This document shows positions 10,501 through 59,611 of a stretch of 64,000 nt of DNA, one piece after another. The first letter of the stretch is position 1. Each line of letters begins with the position of its first letter. The notes beneath the pieces were generated by a model. It had not been told where the DNA came from. It made no database searches and saw only the letters and a program-made list of their open reading frames with translations. This DNA is from Lytechinus pictus (lineage: Eukaryota): contig NC_087260.1 in the NCBI RefSeq assembly GCF_037042905.1, positions 22,444,001 through 22,508,000 on the forward strand. The letters are read 5' to 3'. The position numbers and the translations under genes were made by a program.

Positions 10501-11308
10501 TAAAATATATATTCAGAACGAAATTTATTTTGCTACGAAGAAAAAGGCTGAGGTAGAAGAGCTCTATAAGCGACTCAATATATTTTCACATCATAATAGG
10601 GGCAGTTACAAAGGAAAAAGTGACAACACTAAAATCAATATATGACAGGGTTCTACCATTTTGAGCCTTATCGCTTAAAATATTAGAATTGCAGACTAGG
10701 TTCAATGTTTTAGTTGTCAGTCGTCCATTTTCTTCGGTACAATCTGCAAGGTAAAACGAAATATATATATAAAACACGGTTACACGCAGTCAAAATAATA
10801 ATTACTAGTGTAATGTGAAGGAATCTCCCGTTTGTTACATATAGATTAAATTATCAGGAATGATTAAAAAATATATTATGTAATTGAGAAAAGTGGATGA
10901 GTTGTTCCATGCAACCCTACATCATATACCGTGTACACATTTGAAATCATTTTCCCTTGTAAGGATGGCTTAGCTCTGGTAGGGTCTATTAATCTTTTAA
11001 TATAACTATATAGTAATTATTTATTTTAATTATAAGGCATGTTTCAGAATTCTACATGCATATTCAAGTTAATATATTTTTCAGACAAAAAATAGTTTTA
11101 ATCATGTACAAAGAAACCAAGTTTTGAGAAATAATAATAACCAGTGGTTATAAAACAAAAAATAAGATCTTCCGAATTACTTGTGAATATTGTAATTTCT
11201 ATCCTGATTATCTACAATTTTAGATATTAAAAAAATATTTTATGTTGTTTTGATTACGAAATAAAAAAAAAAACTTTTTTTTAAATAGAGAGAAGAGAAA
11301 TATTTACT

Positions 11309-13689
11309 TTAACCGACGTGTTGGCAAGCACCCTTGAGTGCTTGATAACCACCGTAGAGGGCGGCAGCTTGATCTTCACTGACTCCACGATCACGGAGAG
11401 CCTTCTCTCTGAGTTTCACTGAAGAAATAAGAAGGAAAACACTCTTTGTTAAAGTGATTCTTATGATCGTGATGATAATAATAATAATAATGATAATAAT
11501 AAAAACAACGACAATGATAATAATAATATAATTATTATAGTGACAACAACAACAATATACGTCCCACATTTTACGAATTCATAACAGGGTCGTTCTAAAA
11601 AAAAAAGAAACCCATGTCATAATTCATTGTCCCAACAATATTTTGGCTTGAAATGGAGACCAATGTTAACATCCGTAACTGCATTTCTTAAATTCGGATT
11701 AATAAGCCTATTCGGGAGTTGCTGGTCACTGACAGTGGAAGCAGGAACTGTGCAACTTGTTTAATGTGTCTTTATTTCACTATTTTTTTAAATATTATTT
11801 TGTTTAATTTTGTTTAGCATAGTGGGATGGAACACTTTATCAGCAAGTTTCGTTTTGTAGGGATCTACGTTCGTTCTTGTGCGGGTGTGCATGGGTCTGT
11901 GGGCCGAAAGATGGATGTGTCATGATTTTCAATAATAATAATAATAATTTAAAAAAATCGTTTCAAGAATGGTGACATTTTCTTGAGAATGGCCCGTCAG
12001 TTAGTAGACTTACTCAAATCGTTAAAGGGAATAGAGTTGACGACACCGCACCCGCTTTTAACTGCTCCGGCTACATCGTGGGCAGCCTTTTTGGTCCATC
12101 TGCTGGCGTCGCTGACGGCTTTAGATAACCAGCTAGCAATGAGCACGTCGTCCATCGCCTGCTCATCCAGAACTTTAAAAAATATAATAAAAAACGTTCC
12201 ATTGTAATTGAGAAATGGAAATATTATGCAGATATTGCCTGACTATTGAGATATTGAAAAATAGTTCCGTTATAATATAAGAAATCATTATGATAGATAA
12301 AAATATCATACAGAAATTGCCTGCCCAGACAATGATTATAACATTTTATTTCTCTGAGGGATCTTGATCCATAATGAAATAGCGTTGGGACATAATAATT
12401 AGTCTGCAGGCACAGACCCTGATTGGAACTTTGATCAACAAGTGTGCCTCCACGCAAAGACTAGCACCTGAGCGAGAGAGCCTTCAGAACACAAGGCATG
12501 AGTAGGCTGCACATTCAGACCCTTAACTCGAGTGAAGTGTTTGCCCAGCAGACTACATAATAATTGTCATGAGAATCAAAAATTTACAGAAATTGCAAGC
12601 CTAAAGACGTGGAAAATAACATTACATTTCCCAGATGGATTTATATTGCTCCATATCAAAAGAGCATTCTGTTTAAAAGAAATATTACGAGGAATGAAAA
12701 TACACAGAAATTGCAAGCCTAGACGTTGAATATAACAATCATAATCATTTCCCCGATGAATTTATATCACTTCATAACAAAAGAGCATGCTGTTTAATAG
12801 AAATATTATGAGAAATGAAAATATATACGGAAATTGCCTGCTTAGACGTTGAATATTTTCCGATTGAGTTATAGTTCAATACACATCAAAGAAAAGATGC
12901 ATACAATACACTCTAAATTCCAAATACTACAAGAAATCCAGATCGGTTTCGCACATGACTAGCCTAACATATGGAATTAAACTTAAACCTCGTGGATTCG
13001 TATTCAAAGATGAGATTTAGAAATTAATCCTCTGGATGAAAATAAATCCTATCTTCTGATGGTCACTTCACTCTAAAAAAATGAAATCTTAAATCAACAA
13101 TAAGCTTGGAGGAGTGACAACCTTTTCCAAATGTTATATCCATCATTGCCTAAAGCTGAATCCAATAATATTTAAGTGTGGATCAAACCATTTATGTGGT
13201 GAGTGCAACATTTAGAAAAAGGTATTAACTCTTCCAACCTTTCAATCTCTCATGTAAAATTTAATTGTTAGAGTGTATTCAAGCTGATCAGGATTTATCT
13301 TAAGTCTTTATTGAGAGTTATTATCAAAATTATTACTATTATATTACCAAATAAAATAAAATATAAAACATAGTAGCCTAAAACATCTGTGAAATGGCTC
13401 GGTTGCGACAAACGTTTATAATTTCTCTTATAATAACTGAACGCTTTTTCTTTGATATTTACTGATATAGATTAAAAAAGGTAATATTAAACCTCTAGGC
13501 AGGCAATTTCTGTATAACATTTTCATTTCTCATATTTTTTTTCTCAAAATATTTGTCTCATATAATTGATTAAAACTTACAGAGCCCGATGTCGTCTTCC
13601 TCATCAACGTGTTGCTCCAAGCGGGCAGAGGTCACGTGATTAACCACGACGCCCAGAACAAGCAGAGTAGTGATGATCTTCATATTCAT
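11309..13689 (-). CDS. Centrocin-like heterodimeric antimicrobial peptide precursor, 125 aa, 3 coding exons
   Basis: Exons 13689-13581, 12172-12014 and 11418-11309, with GTAAGT donors, AG acceptors and matching phase-1 junctions. Translation: MNMKIITTLLVLGVVVNHVTSARLEQHVDEEDDIGLFLDEQAMDDVLIA-SWLSKAVSDASRWTKKAAHDVAGAVKSGCGVVNSIPF-NDLMKLREKALRDRGVSEDQAAALYGGYQ-ALKGACQHVG*. Exactly two Cys. LKGAC resembles the centrocin light-chain LRGAC; terminal Gly is an amidation signal. Chain boundaries are inferred. Confidence 0.85.
12400..12555. mobile_element. Academ-type MITE with 9-bp TSD, in an intron of the centrocin-like gene
   Basis: Termini TAGTCTGC...GCAGACTA flanked on both sides by CATAATAAT. 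A related copy lies inverted at 24895-25060. Confidence 0.7.
12585..12855. repeat. Degenerate ~122-bp tandem repeat in intron
   Basis: GAAATTGC(AA)GCCTA(A)GACG-type motif recurs near 12588, 12706 and 12830; related motif near 12311 and inverted near 13497. Confidence 0.65.
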
Positions 13690-14208
13690 TTTGAGAGATG
13701 ATCTGTGACGAAATAAAATAAGTATCATTTCCATCTCATTCGTAATTATAAAAACAATACCTCGATATTCATTAAGCGCCTATAAACAATTTTTTCTATT
13801 CGCTATACAATTATCTTTTGCTTATAGTGAATAATATAAACCATACATTTAGAATTTGTATTCCTTTTTCATATCACAATGCTGAAAACAAAACAAAGTA
13901 AACATTACAAAATCAAATTCATGGTGTAGTGGCTGGATATTATTTCTTGGGGCCCAGAAAATATATAAATCATTTACTGTACACAAGTCATGGTATGTTA
14001 CAACAAAGTGAAATTTCACATCAAAGTAAGATAATTGAGATAAACAATAATGGATAATAAAAATGTGAAGCCCGCTGCCAGAAGCAATAAAACGAAACTT
14101 TCTATAATCAATCTCTACTCCCCAACATCGAATGCAAATTGATTTCAACCCATTAGAAATACGTATAAAGAATTTTGTGAACAGAGACCTATTGTACATG
14201 TATCTTAC

Positions 14209-14304
14209 CGAATCAGGAAAGTTGCGGGAAAGTTATGTTCAGATCCGATGTCTTGACTGGCGCCGTAAATGATTCTCCTCTGGATTGGGCAGGCCTTTTA
14301 TGTA
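14209..14304 (-). promoter_or_regulatory. Candidate 5'-UTR exon and TATA-like box of the centrocin-like gene
   Basis: Minus-strand donor CG|GTAAGA at 14209/14208; acceptor CAG| at 13702, 13 nt before the ATG; TACATAAAA (minus) at 14304-14296; GC boxes at ~14396-14436. Confidence 0.55.
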
Positions 14305-16441
14305 TTTTGCTCTAATGGCAAACGCTGGCGTTGATCGATGCAGGTCGAAGACCAGGGCTGTCCTTTTTTTTTAAACCTAGTTGAAAAATCACAGTCCGCC
14401 CCTGTCCCTACGTAGTACCGCCCCCATTGAGGGCGGAACATGGAGAAAGCAGCAAGACCGTATGGTTAAAGGTGATCCGATACCTTGACCAAACGTCCAT
14501 GAAGAGCAGTGATTGAACGGCCGTATTCAATAGTCATTCAGTCATTATCGTATATACTTCTATGATTAATCAAAGTCATACTGGGACATTTTAGGTTAAC
14601 AGAAAGGATCCGGTTTCCTTTACAGAATTTGAATACGGTTGAATCATCCATGCGATACTTTCGATCCAAACATCAACGATTAAGAGTGATGATTTGAAGT
14701 GCCCACCCCCTATCCCGTCATGTCCAGTAACAATGGGAGTGCGTCACGAATTAAGCATCTTATCAGGGGATTTTTAATGACAAGACTTGTTCTGATTTAT
14801 TTGCTAAAAAGAAAAAATAAATTATTACAGGAAATTTTTAAGGTTTTATACGCCATATACCAATTTTCTGTAATTTTACACAACGTTTTTTTCTATTTTT
14901 TTAAGGAGAATCTAACAGATTATGACGTAATTATGTTCACATAATGATGCAGTTACTACGCAACGTATCTATCATAATGAAATGTCTTATGTTAACATAA
15001 TGATGCGGTTACTACGCAACGCATCCAGCGATCGTTGTTATACGGCGCCAGGGCGCCATTTTGTATGAACTAATTTTGTTTGTGCATCATAATTATTTCA
15101 CTTTCCGATTAATAAATCGAAACTAGTTCAAGAGAATTTTTTCGACTTTCTTCGATTAGTTTTGTTTGTTATGTGTACTTTCCTTGACGGNNNNNNNNNN
15201 NNNNNNNNNNNNNNNNNNNNNNNNNNNNNNNNNNNNNNNNNNNNNNNNNNNNNNNNNNNNNNNNNNNNNNNNNNNNNNNNNNNNNNNNNNNNNNNNNNNN
15301 NNNNNNNNNNNNNNNNNNNNNNNNNNNNNNNNNNNNNNNNNNNNNNNNNNNNNNNNNNNNNNNNNNNAAATTTGTTCCCCGTGGTGTGTGTTACTACCTA
15401 CAATAAAACATAGTCTATACTTTTCCACATTGAACTACTGAATGATTTGTATTATTTTAAAAAAGCACAGTCGGTAATCAATTCATAACATTTTAAAGCA
15501 TTCTATTTTTATTCATTATTTTGTGTCCATTCTATTTTGTCTTTGTTTTAAAGAGCCGGATTTGAAATCAGGGAAAACGAATTGCCTTATTCAAGTTGAT
15601 GGTATACTCATACATCATGCTACGGTATACAAGGACAGAACTTTGATCGCATTTCAGCCTATATATATATACAATGTATTTCATTTCATGTCATTGATTA
15701 CAATTTCCAACAATCGTTTACAATATGTTTTGTTCCATACATCTTGATACATAATCAATGAACAAGGAAAATTTATATGTATTATAATCAAGATAAGCAT
15801 ACAAACAGGTATGGGAACGGAGGAGGCTGCTCAAAAGCGAAGCTTGTATAAAGTGCAGCCTCCTATTAAAATATTCGTATAAACAGTATGAACAAAAACA
15901 CAAGAAAAAAATTGTTAAAATTTGAGCAGAAATCCAGTTGAATGTGTAATAGAGGAAATGGGGGAAAAAGGCGGGATTAAAAGTCTCCAGATTCCTGCCT
16001 GGCACTCACAGCGAATCTCACGGATCAACATCTTTAACATTGGGATGAATGTGAATTTCCAGGGATTATTTAATTTCAGTTTCCAGTGCTCTATAGAGCA
16101 TTTCGGGGGCTAAATCGCCCCCAACCCCTGTATAATTTTTCCCATGCACCGCTGCATAGGATTAAAAAAAGGCATGGAAATGACAGAAACATAATTGTTA
16201 ATGAAGGCTGGCGAAGATCCATAAAATAATAACAGAGATATTCTTTAAAAAAAAACTTGATATCGTAATGTCACATGCGAGAACTTTTGGTTGGGCTGTC
16301 ATACATGTTATGGATTCCATGTGCGATGTTCTAAGATGACAAAAAATATTTTTCAATATGATCTTGAATTTGATAAAAGAGGATTTTACATATTTACAAC
16401 AAGAGGAAATAACACATTATAAAAATGAACATACATGAGAC

Positions 16442-27200: not shown

Positions 27201-30200
27201 GATCTACATTGTATGTCATTTCATGTACTGAAATTGAAAAAAAAATACATAAACCTTGTGATTAGTAATCTGGAGATATAGACCAAGAACCTCTAACATG
27301 TCTAAGTAGTCTGGAGATATCTTCGACATTATAGACCAAGTACCTCTAGTAATATATGTTTTAGTTCCATCCCACTTTTTCTTGGATTTTCTTGCTATGA
27401 TCTTATTAAAAGATATCACTTTGAAATTGAGAAGGGGGCTGTCTTAGCCAGCCCCCCCCCCCCCCGCTACACCACCCATGCAGTCAAAACGGGAAGTCCA
27501 TCCGACGTCAGGTTTATTCTTTACGTAGGAAATTAAGGTGTGTGGGTCTGACGAAAACAAATAAAAGAATATTGAATTACGATTTTTTACAGATTTCATG
27601 TGACGGTATATACATAATGCGCGATGGGCTTCCCCGTATATAGATTCCATAAACTTGCACTATGGGTCACGTAGACTGACAATAGTTTATCATATTGCAT
27701 CAGCTATGAATCAATGTTACTGTTAATAGTGGTGTAATGAGCCCCCCCCCAAAAAAAAAAAAAATAGGGGGGGCTAGATATAGCGTATAGCATGATATTT
27801 ATACAGATGTCGGTCGCTCGCTCGCAAAACTTTCGACATTTTTATTACAAAAATCAAACTTTGTGATAGATTTTGACATAGTATTCAGAAAATAGTTTCA
27901 CCCTTCTCTCTTTCCCATTCTTTTATAGAAGGGGGAGGGCAAGAAAACAGGCAGGTAAAAACAATATTTTTTCTTAAACCCCTTTGCTATAAGATGTCCA
28001 TGCAGGTGATTACATGATTTTTGTCTCGTCCACGACTCAGATTTCTCTGTTTTATATTCTTCTTTCTTGCCCCCGTTCCCTCTGTGGCGCCGCCACTGAA
28101 CATACTTGATAATACCTTGTAACCTTGATAATACTGAACTCAATCGCTTGTATTAGAATTAAAGAGGAAATGAAACCTGATAAGAAGAAGTAGAATGAGA
28201 ATTATAACAGGCCGGTAAAAGTTTAAGCCCGACCATCGCGGCGACAGGGTATTTTAATTGCGGCGGGGGACCTATGATGCGACGTCATTTTCTTTGTCAA
28301 TATTTTGAAAGTTTTTTCATCTTAAAAATGAGAGAAACAAATTCATGGCAGTGGCAGCGCAAAAAAAAAAAGATTTTCACTCATATTCGACCAACTCCCA
28401 GGCCAGCCCTTCGATCCCCCAACTTGTACGGTGGCGCCTCCCACCGGCCCATCAACGTTTAAAAATCACCTTATAGACTATTTTGAATGATCCAACATTA
28501 TTATTTTTTCGTTGATCTTAGAAATAACAAAAGGATTTTGCCTTGCAATGACAACACTAAAAAGGATTTTCTTAATTCACCATCTCCCCCCCCCCCCCGT
28601 GCTTCATCTCATTTTCCTTTATAATCCACCTTAAACGATTAATTCTCTGGGTTTTTTTTAAATGCCTTAACATCATCCACAGTCATAAGGTCGAAGCTGA
28701 TTTTCCGCTCTGCCTTTAGAAGAAGAGATTCTTTCTTTCCACATAATAATTGGTAATTAGCTTCAACGAGAATCGGTCTCCATGGTTATACTCTTTTAGA
28801 GAAATATCGTGACCTCTGTCATATTTATCAAAAAATAATTAGCCCTTTCCAGCCCTATATCTCTATACATAAAAGATCTTTATAGTCTTGTAATAAGCGT
28901 GAATACGCTGCAAAAAGCTGCAAATCATGATGTATAAATCATTGGCCTCTAGCTAATTTCATGATTTTTTTTTGCAGTTTGGAAGAAAAAAAGTCAAGGT
29001 GGAATTAATAATGATATTCATGAAATTGTTTTCATGATTTTCCTTCAGAAATCAAACATGATGACCTTTTTAACTCTATATGCACAAAGAACGCCACACG
29101 AGGACACATCGAACGAATCAAAAGGATAAAGGGACTACCCTGACTGAGAAAAATTATTAGTAAGACAGTTCGGAGACTAATGAGATGAAGTAATTGTTTT
29201 TCACGTTACATTGTGAAGATAATGATGATGATAATTATGCTGCTGCTGATGATTATGATGATGGAGTTGGTGGTAGTGATGNNNNNNNNNNNNNNNNNNN
29301 NNNNNNNNNNNNNNNNNNNNNNNNNNNNNNNNNNNNNNNNNNNNNNNNNNNNNNNNNNNNNNNNNNNNNNNNNNNNNNNNNNNNNNNNNNNNNNNNNNNN
29401 NNNNNNNNNNNNNNNNNNNNNNNNNNNNNNNNNNNNNNNNNNNNNATANNNNNNNNNNNNNNNNNNNNNNNNNNNNNNNNNNNNNNNNNNNNNNNNNNNN
29501 NNNNNNNNNNNNNNNNNNNNNNNNNNNNNNNNNNNNNNNNNNNNNNNNNNNNNNNNNNNNNNNNNNNNNNNNNNNNNNNNNNNNNNNNNNNNNNNNNNNN
29601 NNNNNNNNNNNNNNNNNNNNNNNNNNNNTGATGAAGGTGACGAAGCTTATATAGAAGATTATGAATATGATTAAGCCAAATGATGACGACGATGCCGATG
29701 AATTCCAAGGATTCAAAATAAATCCAGATGGGCTGTAAATAGTGACCAGCTGAAATTTAAATCTATTGAAAATCTTTAGCATAAACTTTGAAATCTCAAA
29801 AGATTTAAATTCAAATCTTTTAGATTTATATTTAAATCAACAAGGTTTAAATCCAGATTTATATTCAGCTGGTCACTATTCATTTATTAATTCTAAATCC
29901 TTTGAATTTAGAGTGTAATGGCAATAACAAGGACATAGATATCTATGATAGTAATAATTATAAGGGAGAAAATAGAGAATAAGGAGAAGAAGAGAAAGGA
30001 TAGTTAGAACAATAACGACAACTACAAAAAGAAAACAAGAATGGGAGGAAAATACATAATTTGCTGCTGATAATTATGATGATAAAGCTAATGATGGAAA
30101 CTAAAGGATTAACTTTTGATCGCTCTTGGAGATTGGTTGTGTTACTTCAATATTTCCCCCATTTATTTGTGCTTTAATATAGAAATGTGCCCTATTTTCA

Positions 30201-31119: not shown

Positions 31120-34100
31120 AGCACCATTTATTCGAGATAAACGTGATCTAACGAAATTTCGACTACCGCATTAGAACCTTTCTCAACAAAACATAACAAA
31201 TTCACTCTCGTTGAAAATAATATACATCAAAACTTGTGTATATCTCGCATGCTTAACATGCTTAACCATGACAACGTAGGCGTTTCTGCACATGCATTAA
31301 ACCTCAAAATAGGTGCTTGATTATGTTTTATTAGCGACAATTCTACACGATGATCAATGAAGTCTCACATTCCAAAGTCACATCGAAACTAAATCGAATT
31401 ATGATTAAGTTAAGAACAGTCTCGCGTTAGGTGTGAAGCACAAACGAAATCTCTTCCCTATGCGTTGCTTCCGCGTTGAGGTGAATATTCGCTTGGTGGC
31501 AGAACATATATTATGTTTCGAAGGAAACGATCCTATTTTGAAAGGGAATTCTATCAGCGATTGATTTGAATTGGGCTGAAGTAGGCAAAATGAAGAGTGG
31601 CACAAAGAGTGATCAAATTATACCGACGGGGTTGCCTCTTTGAATAGATCCACCTTGCACGCATGAAAAATCTTGAATGTATCGACTTAAATCAACTGAA
31701 AAAAAAAACACCGACCGGACTTGGAGCGATATTCGAGTGAAGTCAGTCGCTTTTTTTACAGGAATGCCCTCGCGATATAATCTGAAATGCAAATTTAGTA
31801 TAGGTTTCTGGAATCTTTGATAAGCCTGGAATTAATAAGCGAACATATTCACCCATCGAGTGCAATTCAGCCTCTTCAGAAATGTTGCATTCCGATATTG
31901 ACAATACTTATTACTTCACGCTTGTATGGAACTACTCCGCCCACTTCCGTAGTCTCGGCCATCCTAACACGTTTTGCAAAAAAGTTACAAATGATCCACT
32001 TCAGGTCTTTTACCATCCCAGCCAATGGATATTTACGACAGTGAAATAAAAATATGAAAAGCCGAATATTATTGATTGTAAGCGAGAAACTATATATATT
32101 TACATATTTTTTATTATTGTGAAACTTTATATGGATTTTGGGAGGTAAATTCTACAAGTGACGTAGACTACTCGAATCCAGGTGCGTTTACATGAAGTCT
32201 TTGATGGCAACAGTCTGATTGATCTGTAATGTGAACCGTTTTTCTGATCTTGATCTTAATAAGTGACATTTTAGAACGTGTTGCCAAAGAAAGGACGTGT
32301 GAAGACATTTGCCAATATACAGGCAACAATATATTTGTCGACTCTCAATTACTGATTAAAGGGATGGTCCGGGCTGAAAATATTTATATTTTGATACATA
32401 GAGTAGAATTCACTGAGCAAAATGCCGAAAATTTCATCAAAATCGGATAACAAATAATAAAGTTATTGAAGTTTAAAGTTTAGCAATATTTTGTGAAAAC
32501 AGTCGTCATGAAAATTTATTAGGTGGGCTGATGATGTCACACCCCCACTTTCTGTTTTTTTATGTTATTGCATAAAATCATATTTTTTTCATTATTTCAT
32601 ACATGTGTGAATACTATGTCTCCCTTATAATGAAATAAGTTGCAGCAATAAATATCTATTGCACTAAATCAGTTGTCAATCCAATTTTTCTAGTTCTTGG
32701 AGGAAAAATTTGAATAAACCTAATTTCATATAATAAAATACAAAAGAACAAGTGGGGATGTGACATCATCAGCCCACCTAATGAATATTCATGACGACTG
32801 TTTTCACAAAATATTGCTAAACTTTAAAATTCAATAACATTGTTATTTGTTATCCGATTTTAATGAAATTTTCGGCATTTTGCTCAGTGAATTTTACTCT
32901 ATTTATTAGGCTATAAATCATTCCAGCCCGGACCATCCCTTCAAGGAATTTCAATGCGGTATTTGGAAAATACGGCGACTAGTCATGCAGTTATTACTAC
33001 ACACTACATTTATCTCGCTTTGTCAAACCAGAAGCACTATGTGCAAAATTGGCTGACAGAATATGTAGTAAATCACCAGGATACTGTTTGACTATCACAT
33101 GAACCACCCTTAATTCGAGTCGCAAATTTCATTTCAACTATTAAACTATAGGTTTATGTATAGTCTTGATTGTAAGAGAATAAATAAAATGTTTTGAATT
33201 TGCTTTAATATAATAATGATGATGAATATGATAATTATNNNNNNNNNNNNNNNNNNNNNNNNNNNNNNNNNNNNNNNNNNNNNNNNNNNNNNNNNNNNNN
33301 NNNNNNNNNNNNNNNNNNNNNNNNNNNNNNNNNNNNNNNNNNNNNNNNNNNNNNNNNNNNNNNNNNNNACAACAAATTGAGATGGTCTGGAATATGGAAG
33401 CAACGAACCTCGCCAACTACCTATCCAATCCACCTGATATACTGACGAGTATATCCCTCGATTATGATAAATGTCAAGCAATATACTCCATTAACAAGCA
33501 AGCATCTATCTTATTGGCACAACATCGACTGACACTACCCTACGGTGAAAAAGAGAAGGCAAGACTTAAATGCTCCTTTCACAAGAAACTTCAAGAGCAA
33601 CTTAAATCCAAGCGACTTCATGGCCACCATGAAAAACAGACGCATCGGGAGTTCGTAGACCAGAAAGACACACATCAATGGCTTAAGTCGGCGGGACTAA
33701 GAGGTGAAACTGAAGGGTTCGTCTATGCTATTCAGGACCAGGTGGTGAGGACCCGTGCCTACGAAAAATCTATCCTCAGAAGAGACACAGACGACACTTG
33801 CAGGATGTGTGGAAAAGAGACCGAAACAATCATGCATTTGGTATCAGCATGTTCGACTCTTGCTGGAACTGAGTACATCACAAGACATGACAATATTGCC
33901 AAAGTTATCCATTGGCAACTACTGAAGGATCGCGGTAAAATGACTTGTGATCACGCTTGGGAACATCAGCCACAAACGATCACCCCGATCAATAACAGCA
34001 CCATATATTGGAACTGTGGCATACTAACGGATAGAACCATCAACTGCAACAAGCCGGACATCATCGTCAGAGACAACAACGTAGTAAATATCATTGAGGT

Positions 34101-47669: not shown

Positions 47670-59611
<11,942 letters not shown>

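What the first reader, a model, noticed from the sequence alone, without database searches (positions are those of the whole stretch)
11309..13689. Spliced gene largely missed by the ORF track encodes a divergent centrocin-like heterodimeric antimicrobial peptide precursor
Seen in sequence: three short minus-strand exons join in phase into a 125-aa precursor. It comprises a signal peptide (~21-22 aa), an acidic pro-piece (EQHVDEEDDIGLFLDEQAMDD), a cationic segment SWLSKAVSDASRWTKKAAHDVAGAVKSGCGVVNSIPF (5 K/R, 2 D, Trp at position 2, one Cys), a spacer, and ALKGACQHV-G-stop (one Cys, amidation Gly). Established: sea-urchin centrocins have this layout, with a heavy chain starting GW/SW (brominated Trp), an excised interchain peptide, and a DLRGAC-type amidated light chain linked by one disulfide. 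Inference: this is a new, strongly diverged family member, with a heavy chain longer than the ~30 aa of known centrocins and an unusual spacer containing basic residues and Tyr.
Basis: partly seen in the sequence, partly recalled or inferred. Interest (0 to 1): 0.92.

Follow-up and report, generated by a model that had tools for sequence, protein, structure and literature searches.

The report
Expressed centrocin-family peptide gene, Lytechinus pictus
The three exons form a real, transcribed sea-urchin gene (RefSeq "uncharacterized protein LOC129279165") that encodes a secreted precursor related to the centrocin antimicrobial peptides; it is a diverged member of a known family, not a new kind of thing.

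Summary
Exons 13689-13581, 12172-12014 and 11418-11309 (minus strand) join in phase through GT..AG introns into 125 aa. Transcript contigs from two public runs carry exactly these two joints with no mismatches. The product is identical to Lytechinus pictus RefSeq LOC129279165, annotated "uncharacterized".

- **Family:** the gene is one of seven loci in this genome (C16, C4 x2, C11 x3, C13). All share the same exon plan and the invariants W51, G77-C78, N82, C121 and a terminal Gly.
- **Link to centrocins:** the published centrocin heavy chains match this gene (z 7.8 against SdCentrocin 1) and a family profile (0 to 16 of 3000 shuffles reach the score). Two unrelated Trp-containing helical peptides do not match.
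- **Layout:** segment lengths fit the published 20/30/30-32/24/15 plan.

Not shown here: cleavage into two chains, bromination, amidation, the tissue of expression, antimicrobial activity, and similarity to canonical light chains or full precursors.

Two new details. Heavy-chain length in the family steps in 11-residue Trp-led modules. In this clade the heavy chain is the most conserved segment, at 84% against 47-54% elsewhere.

The parts
14209..14239 (-). 3' end of the 5'UTR exon (GTAAGA donor at 14208-14203). How far it extends upstream is not determined. A TATA-like CATAAAAGG lies at about 14296-14288.
   Evidence: The contig's loose end beyond 13703 matches the window uniquely at 14210-14239; sequence read.
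13581..13702 (-). Coding exon 1. The ATG is at 13689. It encodes the signal peptide (aa 1-22, 13689-13624) and the first part of the acidic propiece. It ends in phase 1.
   Evidence: The AG acceptor is at 13704-13703.
12173..13580 (-). Intron 1 (1408 nt, GT..AG). It contains a dispersed repeat of about 157 bp at 12400-12556.
   Evidence: Joint 12172|13581 in two transcript contigs; repeat copy number.
12014..12172 (-). Coding exon 2. It encodes the end of the propiece (to 12135) and the heavy-chain-like segment aa 50-86 (12134-12024), with W51 at 12131-12129, W62 at 12098-12096, C78 at 12050-12048 and the NSIP motif at 12038-12027. It ends in phase 1 after D-L.
   Evidence: The exon boundary position and phase are the same in all paralogues.
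11419..12013 (-). Intron 2 (595 nt, GT..AG). It contains an AT-rich microsatellite at about 11461-11555. This microsatellite supplies the poly-Ile/Val head of the mechanical 86-aa ORF.
   Evidence: Joint 11418|12014 in two transcript contigs; ORF list.
11308..11418 (-). Coding exon 3. It encodes the spacer (to 11357) and the light-chain-like end aa 111-125 (11356-11312), with C121 at 11326-11324, the terminal Gly at 11314-11312 and the stop at 11311-11309. A GT donor follows 1 nt after the stop.
10524..10743 (-). 3'UTR exon. The acceptor ...ccttgcag lies immediately before 10743, and the AATAAA signal is at 10529-10524.
   Evidence: The 201-nt loose end at 11308 matches the window uniquely at 10714-10743; sequence read; AATAAA located.

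Best explanation
This is Lytechinus pictus gene LOC129279165. It has five exons, is spliced and transcribed, and encodes a 125-aa secreted prepropeptide of the echinoid centrocin family.

Shown here: the gene model, its transcription, its orthologues and paralogues, and its homology to published centrocin heavy chains.

Inferred by analogy with characterised centrocins:
- The signal peptide is removed after Ala22.
- Cys78 and Cys121 form a disulfide.
- The acidic propiece (net charge -9), which would mask the basic chain, is excised, and so is the spacer of about 24 aa.
- This leaves a heavy chain that starts Ser50-Trp51, with the Trp possibly 6-brominated, linked to a short light chain whose terminal Gly is converted to a Val-amide.
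- The heavy chain is two 11-residue Trp-led modules plus an AVKSGC cap. It would form an amphipathic helix that binds and disrupts microbial membranes.
For: - **Gene model and expression:**. Exon 2 is also held in full by 8 runs from 2 studies.
- **Identity and orthologues:** the product is 100% identical to RefSeq LOC129279165. L. variegatus has a 91% orthologue and S. purpuratus has orthologues at about 60%.
- **Family:** 7 loci in the genome share the same exon plan and intron phases. Invariant positions are W51, G77-C78, N82, L89 and C121; P85 and G125 are nearly invariant.
- **Homology to characterised centrocin heavy chains:** pairwise z is 7.8 for this gene and about 10 for paralogues. 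The family profile scores SdCentrocin 1 at 12.9 bits and EeCentrocin 2 at 9.6 bits, with 0 of 3000 shuffles as high. EeCentrocin 1 gives 5 of 3000 and Ee4635 gives 16 of 3000. The controls papillosin and halocyntin score at chance.
- **Architecture:** segments of 22/27/37/24/15 aa compare with the published 20/30/30-32/24/15, and the heavy chain starts at residue 50-51 against 51 in the Echinus precursors.
- **Amphipathicity:** the hydrophobic moment of residues 50-78 is 0.485 (1 of 5001 shuffles as high), against 0.51-0.59 for known heavy chains.
- **Signal peptide:** the pattern is K4, a 12-residue hydrophobic core, then T-S-A before the cleavage point, read directly from the sequence.
Against: - No evidence here bears on cleavage into two chains, bromination, amidation, coelomocyte expression or activity.
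- The net charge of the putative heavy chain is only +3, against about +5 for centrocin 1.
- The sequence after the Cys (GVVNSIP) differs from the canonical xALG[HF].
- The one published light chain available shows no detectable similarity.
- Canonical full-length precursors could not be retrieved, so the regions said to be most conserved in centrocins (prepro and interchain) were never compared.
- Unlike the published centrocin pattern, the heavy chain is the most conserved segment between Lytechinus and Strongylocentrotus (84% against 47-54%). That is unusual for a generic membrane-lytic peptide.
- Two deep RNA-seq runs of the species gave no reads on the exons.
- The AlphaFold model is unreliable, with pLDDT 49.
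Confidence: 0.62

Rival explanations
1. It belongs to the same gene family but to a functionally distinct subfamily. The product would either stay a single-chain helical hairpin stapled by Cys78-Cys121, or be a processed peptide that recognises a specific target, for example in immune signalling, opsonisation or lipid binding, rather than acting as a broad membrane-lytic AMP.
For: The heavy-chain core WTKKAAHDVAGAVK[SK]GCGVVNS[IL]PF is 88% identical between Lytechinus and Strongylocentrotus, while signal, pro, spacer and light chain are 47-54% identical. This is the reverse of the pattern reported for centrocins. Net charge is only +3, with a conserved Asp in every module. N82 and P85 are invariant after the Cys, and canonical centrocins have no such motif. 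No dibasic sites or other obvious cleavage sites flank the spacer.
Against: The layout, Cys pattern, Trp start and terminal Gly are those of centrocins. Canonical centrocins also lack dibasic sites, yet they are cleaved. Amphipathicity equals that of active heavy chains. Many active AMPs carry a charge of only +2 to +3 (general knowledge).
Confidence: 0.28
2. It is an amidated neuropeptide or hormone precursor unrelated to centrocins.
For: It has a signal peptide, a C-terminal Gly that could be an amidation signal, and small size.
Against: No KR or RR processing sites flank any candidate peptide; the only KK lies inside the helical module. Homologues fall in a family with significant similarity to centrocin heavy chains. 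Two conserved Cys lie 43-49 residues apart. There are no Pfam or PDB matches to peptide-hormone families.
Confidence: 0.05
3. It is a chance arrangement of ORFs or a pseudogene without function.
For: None beyond the absence of reads in two RNA-seq runs.
Against: Spliced transcript contigs carry exact joints. The reading frame is intact. Orthologues are conserved in two other species. Family invariants and intron phases are conserved.
Confidence: 0.01

Closest known systems
SdCentrocin 1 and 2 (Strongylocentrotus droebachiensis; Li et al. 2010, as cited in PMC3561256 and PMC4805251)
   Same: A heterodimeric AMP made from one precursor. The heavy chain has Trp at position 2 and a single Cys near its C-terminus, and forms an amphipathic cationic helix. 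Nine of 16 residues are identical over WFKKTFHKVSHAVKSG / WTKKAAHDVAGAVKSG.
   Different: Its heavy chain is 30 aa with a Trp-to-Cys distance of 23, against 27 here (16 plus one 11-residue module). It has IHAGQRG before the Cys and SALGF after it, where this gene has GVVNSIPF. Its charge is about +5 against +3. Its light chain and full precursor were not available for comparison.
EeCentrocin 1 and 2 (Echinus esculentus; PMC4805251)
   Same: The precursor plan is signal 20 / pro 30 / heavy chain 30-32 / interchain 24 / light chain 15 with a Gly-containing amidation signal. The heavy chain starts at residue 51, and each chain has one Cys. The heavy chains score above shuffles against the family profile (0 and 5 of 3000).
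   Different: Pairwise similarity to this particular gene is weak (z 2.1 to 3.4). The light chain DIGKYCGYAHALN-GR has 7 residues after the Cys, against 3 here, and shows no detectable similarity. The amidation signal is Gly-Arg, against a bare terminal Gly here.
S. purpuratus LOC115928446, LOC105441616 and LOC105442346, and L. variegatus LOC121430399 (all annotated 'uncharacterized')
   Same: They are direct orthologues with the same layout, and the heavy-chain core is 88% identical.
   Different: The S. purpuratus copies carry one extra 11-residue WTKKA module (Trp-to-Cys distance 38) and occur as several copies. They may be the unnamed 'putative S. purpuratus homologues' in the figures of PMC4805251, but this could not be checked because figures are not held.
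Other disulfide-linked two-chain AMPs such as halocidin (tunicate) and distinctin (frog); recalled from memory, not tested here
   Same: They work alike: a cationic helical chain linked to a second chain by one disulfide.
   Different: They are unrelated in sequence and in precursor organisation, and no membership is claimed.

Membership tests
Centrocins (echinoid heterodimeric AMPs) | Prepropeptide layout: signal about 20 aa, acidic prosequence about 30, heavy chain 30-32, interchain 24, light chain 12-15 including an amidation signal | tested here: met
   The segments 22/27/37/24/15 aa sum to 125. The heavy chain starts at S50-W51, against residue 51 in the Echinus precursors. The heavy-chain/spacer and spacer/light-chain boundaries are placed by analogy only.
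Centrocins (echinoid heterodimeric AMPs) | Exactly one Cys near the heavy-chain C-terminus and one Cys in the light chain | tested here: met
   C78 and C121 are the only Cys residues. Both are invariant in 12 family members, and the Cys-Cys spacing is 43-49.
Centrocins (echinoid heterodimeric AMPs) | Trp at heavy-chain position 1-3 | tested here: met
   W51 is the second residue after the propiece and is invariant in the family.
Centrocins (echinoid heterodimeric AMPs) | 6-bromination of that Trp | not testable with these tools
   This needs mass spectrometry or NMR of the native peptide.
Centrocins (echinoid heterodimeric AMPs) | Sequence homology of the heavy chain to characterised centrocins | tested here: met
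   Pairwise z against the SdCentrocin 1 heavy chain is 7.8. The family HMM gives 12.9 bits for SdCen1 and 9.6 bits for EeCen2, with 0 of 3000 shuffles as high; EeCen1 gives 5 of 3000 and Ee4635 gives 16 of 3000. Unrelated controls score at chance.
Centrocins (echinoid heterodimeric AMPs) | Sequence homology of the light chain to characterised centrocins | tested here: inconclusive
   For the EeCentrocin 1 light chain against the family HMM, 411 of 3000 shuffles score as high. The sequence is very short, and no Sd light-chain sequence was available.
Centrocins (echinoid heterodimeric AMPs) | Conserved prepro and interchain regions (58-79% among Sd, Ee and Sp centrocins) | not tested
   No search returned a canonical full-length precursor, and the published alignments are figures that are not held.
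Centrocins (echinoid heterodimeric AMPs) | Cationic amphipathic helical heavy chain | tested here: met
   The hydrophobic moment is 0.485 (1 of 5001 shuffles as high), against 0.51-0.59 for known heavy chains. Net charge is +3, which is weaker than about +5.
Centrocins (echinoid heterodimeric AMPs) | C-terminal amidation signal on the light chain | tested here: met
   The protein ends ...CQHV-G-stop. Within the family, Gly is terminal in 10 of 12 members, one ends GK and one ends DH. Amidation itself was not tested.
Centrocins (echinoid heterodimeric AMPs) | Excision of the interchain peptide to give two disulfide-linked chains; coelomocyte expression; antimicrobial activity of the heavy chain | not testable with these tools
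   Only transcription as such is shown. Sample identities are coded.
Amidated neuropeptide precursors | Candidate peptides flanked by dibasic (KR/RR/KK) cleavage sites | tested here: not met
   There is no KR or RR. The single KK (residues 64-65) lies inside the conserved helical module.

The most novel reading that the evidence does not exclude
The gene would belong to a distinct 'modular' centrocin subfamily. In it the heavy chain is built from a variable number of 11-residue Trp-led modules (x-W-T-K-K-A-x-x-D-x-x), so the Trp-to-Cys distance is quantised at 16, 27, 38 and 49 residues, reaching 78 in a 201-aa paralogue. The modules end in a conserved GC-x-V-N-x-x-P cap. Because 11 residues make almost exactly three helical turns, all the (possibly brominated) Trp residues would lie on one stripe of the helix. 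The heavy-chain core is under strong purifying selection, at 88% identity between Lytechinus and Strongylocentrotus against about 50% elsewhere. That would point to a specific molecular target or a dedicated processing enzyme rather than generic membrane lysis.
Probability: 0.3. Interest if true: 0.6.

Novelty: new member of a known kind. Interest (0 to 1): 0.42.

Why it matters
Centrocins have been characterised biochemically in only two urchin species. Here an "uncharacterized" RefSeq gene in the laboratory model Lytechinus pictus, and six paralogues, are tied to that family on tested evidence. This gives a complete, genetically tractable repertoire. The 11-residue modular length variation and the unusually conserved heavy chain are testable leads on how these two-chain peptides evolve and act. 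None of this changes a major concept: it is a useful annotation plus a modest evolutionary observation.

Tried and rejected
- **Canonical precursors not retrieved.** Three word-indexed protein searches and one exhaustive profile search of 1.84 billion representatives returned only unnamed urchin relatives, no named Sd or Ee centrocin. This may mean they are absent from the libraries or too diverged, so it is not evidence against homology.
- **Short queries gave nothing.** Published heavy chains of 30-32 aa gave no candidates against the 812-Mb genome. This is uninformative for such short queries.
- **Metagenome scan:** a family pattern found no confirmed relative.
- **Domain and RNA libraries:** Pfam, PDB sequence search and Rfam gave nothing meaningful.
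- **Structure prediction:** AlphaFold2 on a 7-sequence alignment gave pLDDT 49, so it was given no weight.
- **Literature on these genes:** no paper mentions these LOC identifiers.
- **Paralogue gene model:** an exact splice reconstruction of P0007 from the three C11 loci failed, because the fetched copies differ slightly from that protein. Boundary inspection was used instead.
- **Intron-1 RNA signal:** the heavy RNA-seq depth at 12313-12615 was considered as a possible intronic RNA gene and rejected. It comes from a dispersed repeat with more than 2000 candidate copies, and the reads only partly fit.
Full report
**Observation.** Reading 11200-13800 on the minus strand and joining 13689-13581, 12172-12014 and 11418-11309 gives 378 nt in phase, which is 125 aa plus a stop. 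Both introns begin GTAAGT and end in a polypyrimidine tract plus AG. The exons are 50-53% GC and the introns 31-32%. The mechanical ORF list holds only fragments of the gene. One of these is an 86-aa ORF whose front half is a translated AT-rich microsatellite in intron 2.

**Transcription and full gene structure.** Contigs from two public runs were laid on 11000-14000. One is 921 nt at depth 36 (X1) and the other 842 nt at depth 7.8 (X2). They match the three exons with no mismatches and carry joints exactly at 11418|12014 and 12172|13581. The ends read CT..AC on the plus strand, which is GT..AG on the gene strand. The introns are not covered, apart from a repeat.

Both contigs continue beyond the exons.
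- The 30-nt loose end beyond 13703 maps uniquely to 14210-14239. That stretch ends at a GTAAGA donor, and coding exon 1 is preceded by an AG at 13704-13703.
- The loose end at 11308 maps uniquely to 10714-10743, behind a ...ccttgcag acceptor. AATAAA lies at 10529-10524.

The gene therefore has at least five exons, and its 3'UTR intron begins one base after the stop codon. Exon 2 alone is held in full by eight runs from two studies. Two deep raw RNA-seq runs, read to about 6%, gave no reads on the exons. Expression is therefore probably specific to a tissue or stage.

**Identity.** A protein search returned a 125-aa RefSeq entry, "uncharacterized protein LOC129279165 [Lytechinus pictus]", at 100% identity. 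The window is G000:C16:22444001-22508000 of an 812-Mb assembly. Orthologues are L. variegatus LOC121430399 (91% identity) and S. purpuratus LOC115928446, LOC105441616 and LOC105442346 (about 60%). No held paper mentions any of these identifiers.

**A seven-locus family.** Searching the genome with exon 2, and later with a family profile, finds seven loci:
- this gene on C16;
- three tandem copies about 16.5 kb apart on C11;
- a head-to-head pair on C4;
- one gene on C13.

All have the same plan. Exon 1 carries the signal and the start of the acidic propiece. Exon 2 carries a Trp-led basic segment ending ...GC-x-V-N-x-x-P-x-x-[DE]-L. Exon 3 carries the spacer plus ...K-x-x-C-x-x-[VIL]-G. The intron after the heavy-chain exon lies at the same codon position and phase in every paralogue. 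In a 12-sequence alignment from three urchin species plus one metatranscriptome sequence, W51, G77, C78, N82, L89 and C121 are invariant, and P85 and G125 are nearly so. An exhaustive profile search of 1.84 billion representatives found no family member outside sea urchins, apart from a 117-aa plankton metatranscriptome sequence with a GW start.

**Link to centrocins.** The published sequences available here are the SdCentrocin 1 heavy chain (PMC3561256) and the EeCentrocin 1, EeCentrocin 2 and Ee4635 heavy chains plus the EeCentrocin 1 light chain (PMC4805251).
- **Pairwise Smith-Waterman against shuffles:** z is 7.8 for this gene against SdCentrocin 1, with 9 of 16 residues identical. It is 9.7 for the C11 paralogue, which shares the heptamer HKVSHAV, and 10.3 for a C4 paralogue, which shares WFKK-F-KV-HA.
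- **Family HMM:** SdCentrocin 1 scores 12.9 bits and EeCentrocin 2 scores 9.6 bits, and 0 of 3000 composition-matched shuffles reach either score. EeCentrocin 1 gives 5 of 3000 and Ee4635 gives 16 of 3000.
- **Controls:** two unrelated Trp-containing helical tunicate AMPs, papillosin and halocyntin, give 669 and 410 of 3000. The EeCentrocin 1 light chain gives 411 of 3000.

Heavy-chain homology is therefore supported, and light-chain homology is undetectable.

The architecture also fits. PMC4805251 describes signal 20, pro 30, heavy chain 30-32 starting at residue 51, interchain 24 and light chain 15 with a Gly-Arg amidation signal. This protein divides as 22/27/37/24/15, with Ser50-Trp51 opening the basic segment and a terminal Gly. 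Canonical full-length precursors could not be retrieved. The prepro and interchain regions, said to be the best conserved in centrocins, therefore remain uncompared.

**Physical properties.**
- The propiece has net charge -9.
- The putative heavy chain is +3 with one His.
- Residues 50-78 have a helical hydrophobic moment of 0.485, and only 1 of 5001 shuffles is as high. Two known heavy chains give 0.51-0.59.
- The N-terminus has K4, a 12-residue hydrophobic core and T-S-A before Arg23, which is a standard signal-peptidase pattern read from the sequence.
- AlphaFold2 predicts helices throughout, but at pLDDT 49, so it was given no weight.

**Two features not described for centrocins in the papers read.**
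1. Heavy-chain length steps in 11-residue modules of the form x-W-T-K-K-A-x-x-D-x-x. Trp residues are spaced exactly 11 apart. The first-Trp-to-Cys distance takes these values:
   - 16 in the metatranscriptome sequence;
   - 27 in this gene and in the C11 and C4 paralogues;
   - 38 in the S. purpuratus orthologues;
   - 49 in two S. purpuratus paralogues;
   - 78 in a 201-aa L. variegatus paralogue, and in its L. pictus C13 counterpart.
   The alignment to SdCentrocin 1 places its Trp2 on the second Trp here, so this gene's extra length is one N-terminal module.
2. Between L. pictus and S. purpuratus the heavy chain is 84% identical, and its core 88%. Signal, pro, spacer and light chain are 47-54% identical. 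This is the opposite of the pattern reported for centrocins, where the heavy and light chains vary most.

Together with the modest charge and the invariant Asn82/Pro85, this keeps open a more specific function or a dedicated processing step.

**Mechanism.**
- **Shown:** a spliced, transcribed, conserved gene for a secreted two-Cys prepropeptide homologous to centrocin heavy chains.
- **Inferred:** signal cleavage after Ala22; a Cys78-Cys121 disulfide; removal of the acidic propiece and the spacer; Trp bromination; C-terminal amidation; membrane-active amphipathic helix.

I put 0.62 on this centrocin-like heterodimeric AMP reading. I put 0.28 on a functionally distinct or uncleaved subfamily member, 0.05 on a neuropeptide-type precursor (there are no dibasic sites, and its homologues say otherwise), and about 0.01 on artefact or pseudogene.

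**Verdict.** It is a new, diverged member of a known family in an already annotated gene, so interest is moderate rather than high. That is consistent with the C4 pair found independently here.

Noticed in passing
window 12400-12556 (inside intron 1): A dispersed repeat of about 157 bp with short inverted ends (…gtagtctgc / gcagact…). More than 2000 first-look candidates occur genome-wide at 89-97% identity. It draws very high RNA-seq depth, but nearly all reads fit it only partly, so the signal comes from other copies and not from this gene. There is no Rfam match.
   Followed up: partly
G000 C11:11129813-11164621 (L004-L006); C4:6029514-6038852 (L003, L007, L008); C13:7236443-7237743 (L002): Six paralogues of the gene: three tandem copies about 16.5 kb apart, a head-to-head pair about 7 kb apart, and a gene whose heavy chain carries about seven 11-residue Trp modules. 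The C11 copies share the heptamer HKVSHAV with the SdCentrocin 1 heavy chain.
   Followed up: partly
proteins P0011-P0014, P0017, P0020-P0023, P0025 (one search hits; sequences): Large proteins unrelated to this family carry long arrays of a similar 11-residue Trp-led repeat (for example NWTENAVDDAS, QWVGNAANDVG, QWTETAAKDAT). Most come from unnamed assemblies; one is from a planctomycete MAG and one from a parasitoid wasp. They match the heavy-chain part of the profile at E values of 1e-10 to 1e-4. This is probably convergence on an amphipathic 11/3-helix repeat, and it was not investigated.
   Followed up: no
window 11308-11311 and 10743: The GT donor of the last intron lies one base after the TAA stop, so the entire 3'UTR sits in a separate exon 565 nt downstream. 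The stop is too close to the junction to be expected to trigger nonsense-mediated decay (general knowledge).
   Followed up: no
window 11461-11555 (intron 2): An AT-rich ATT/ATC microsatellite translates in frame with exon 3 as poly-Ile/Val. It inflates the mechanical ORF to 86 aa, which is a trap for ORF-based annotation.
   Followed up: yes
window 15191-15367, 29282-29628, 33239-33368, 58768-58902: Five runs of N (130-180 nt) in the window.
   Followed up: no
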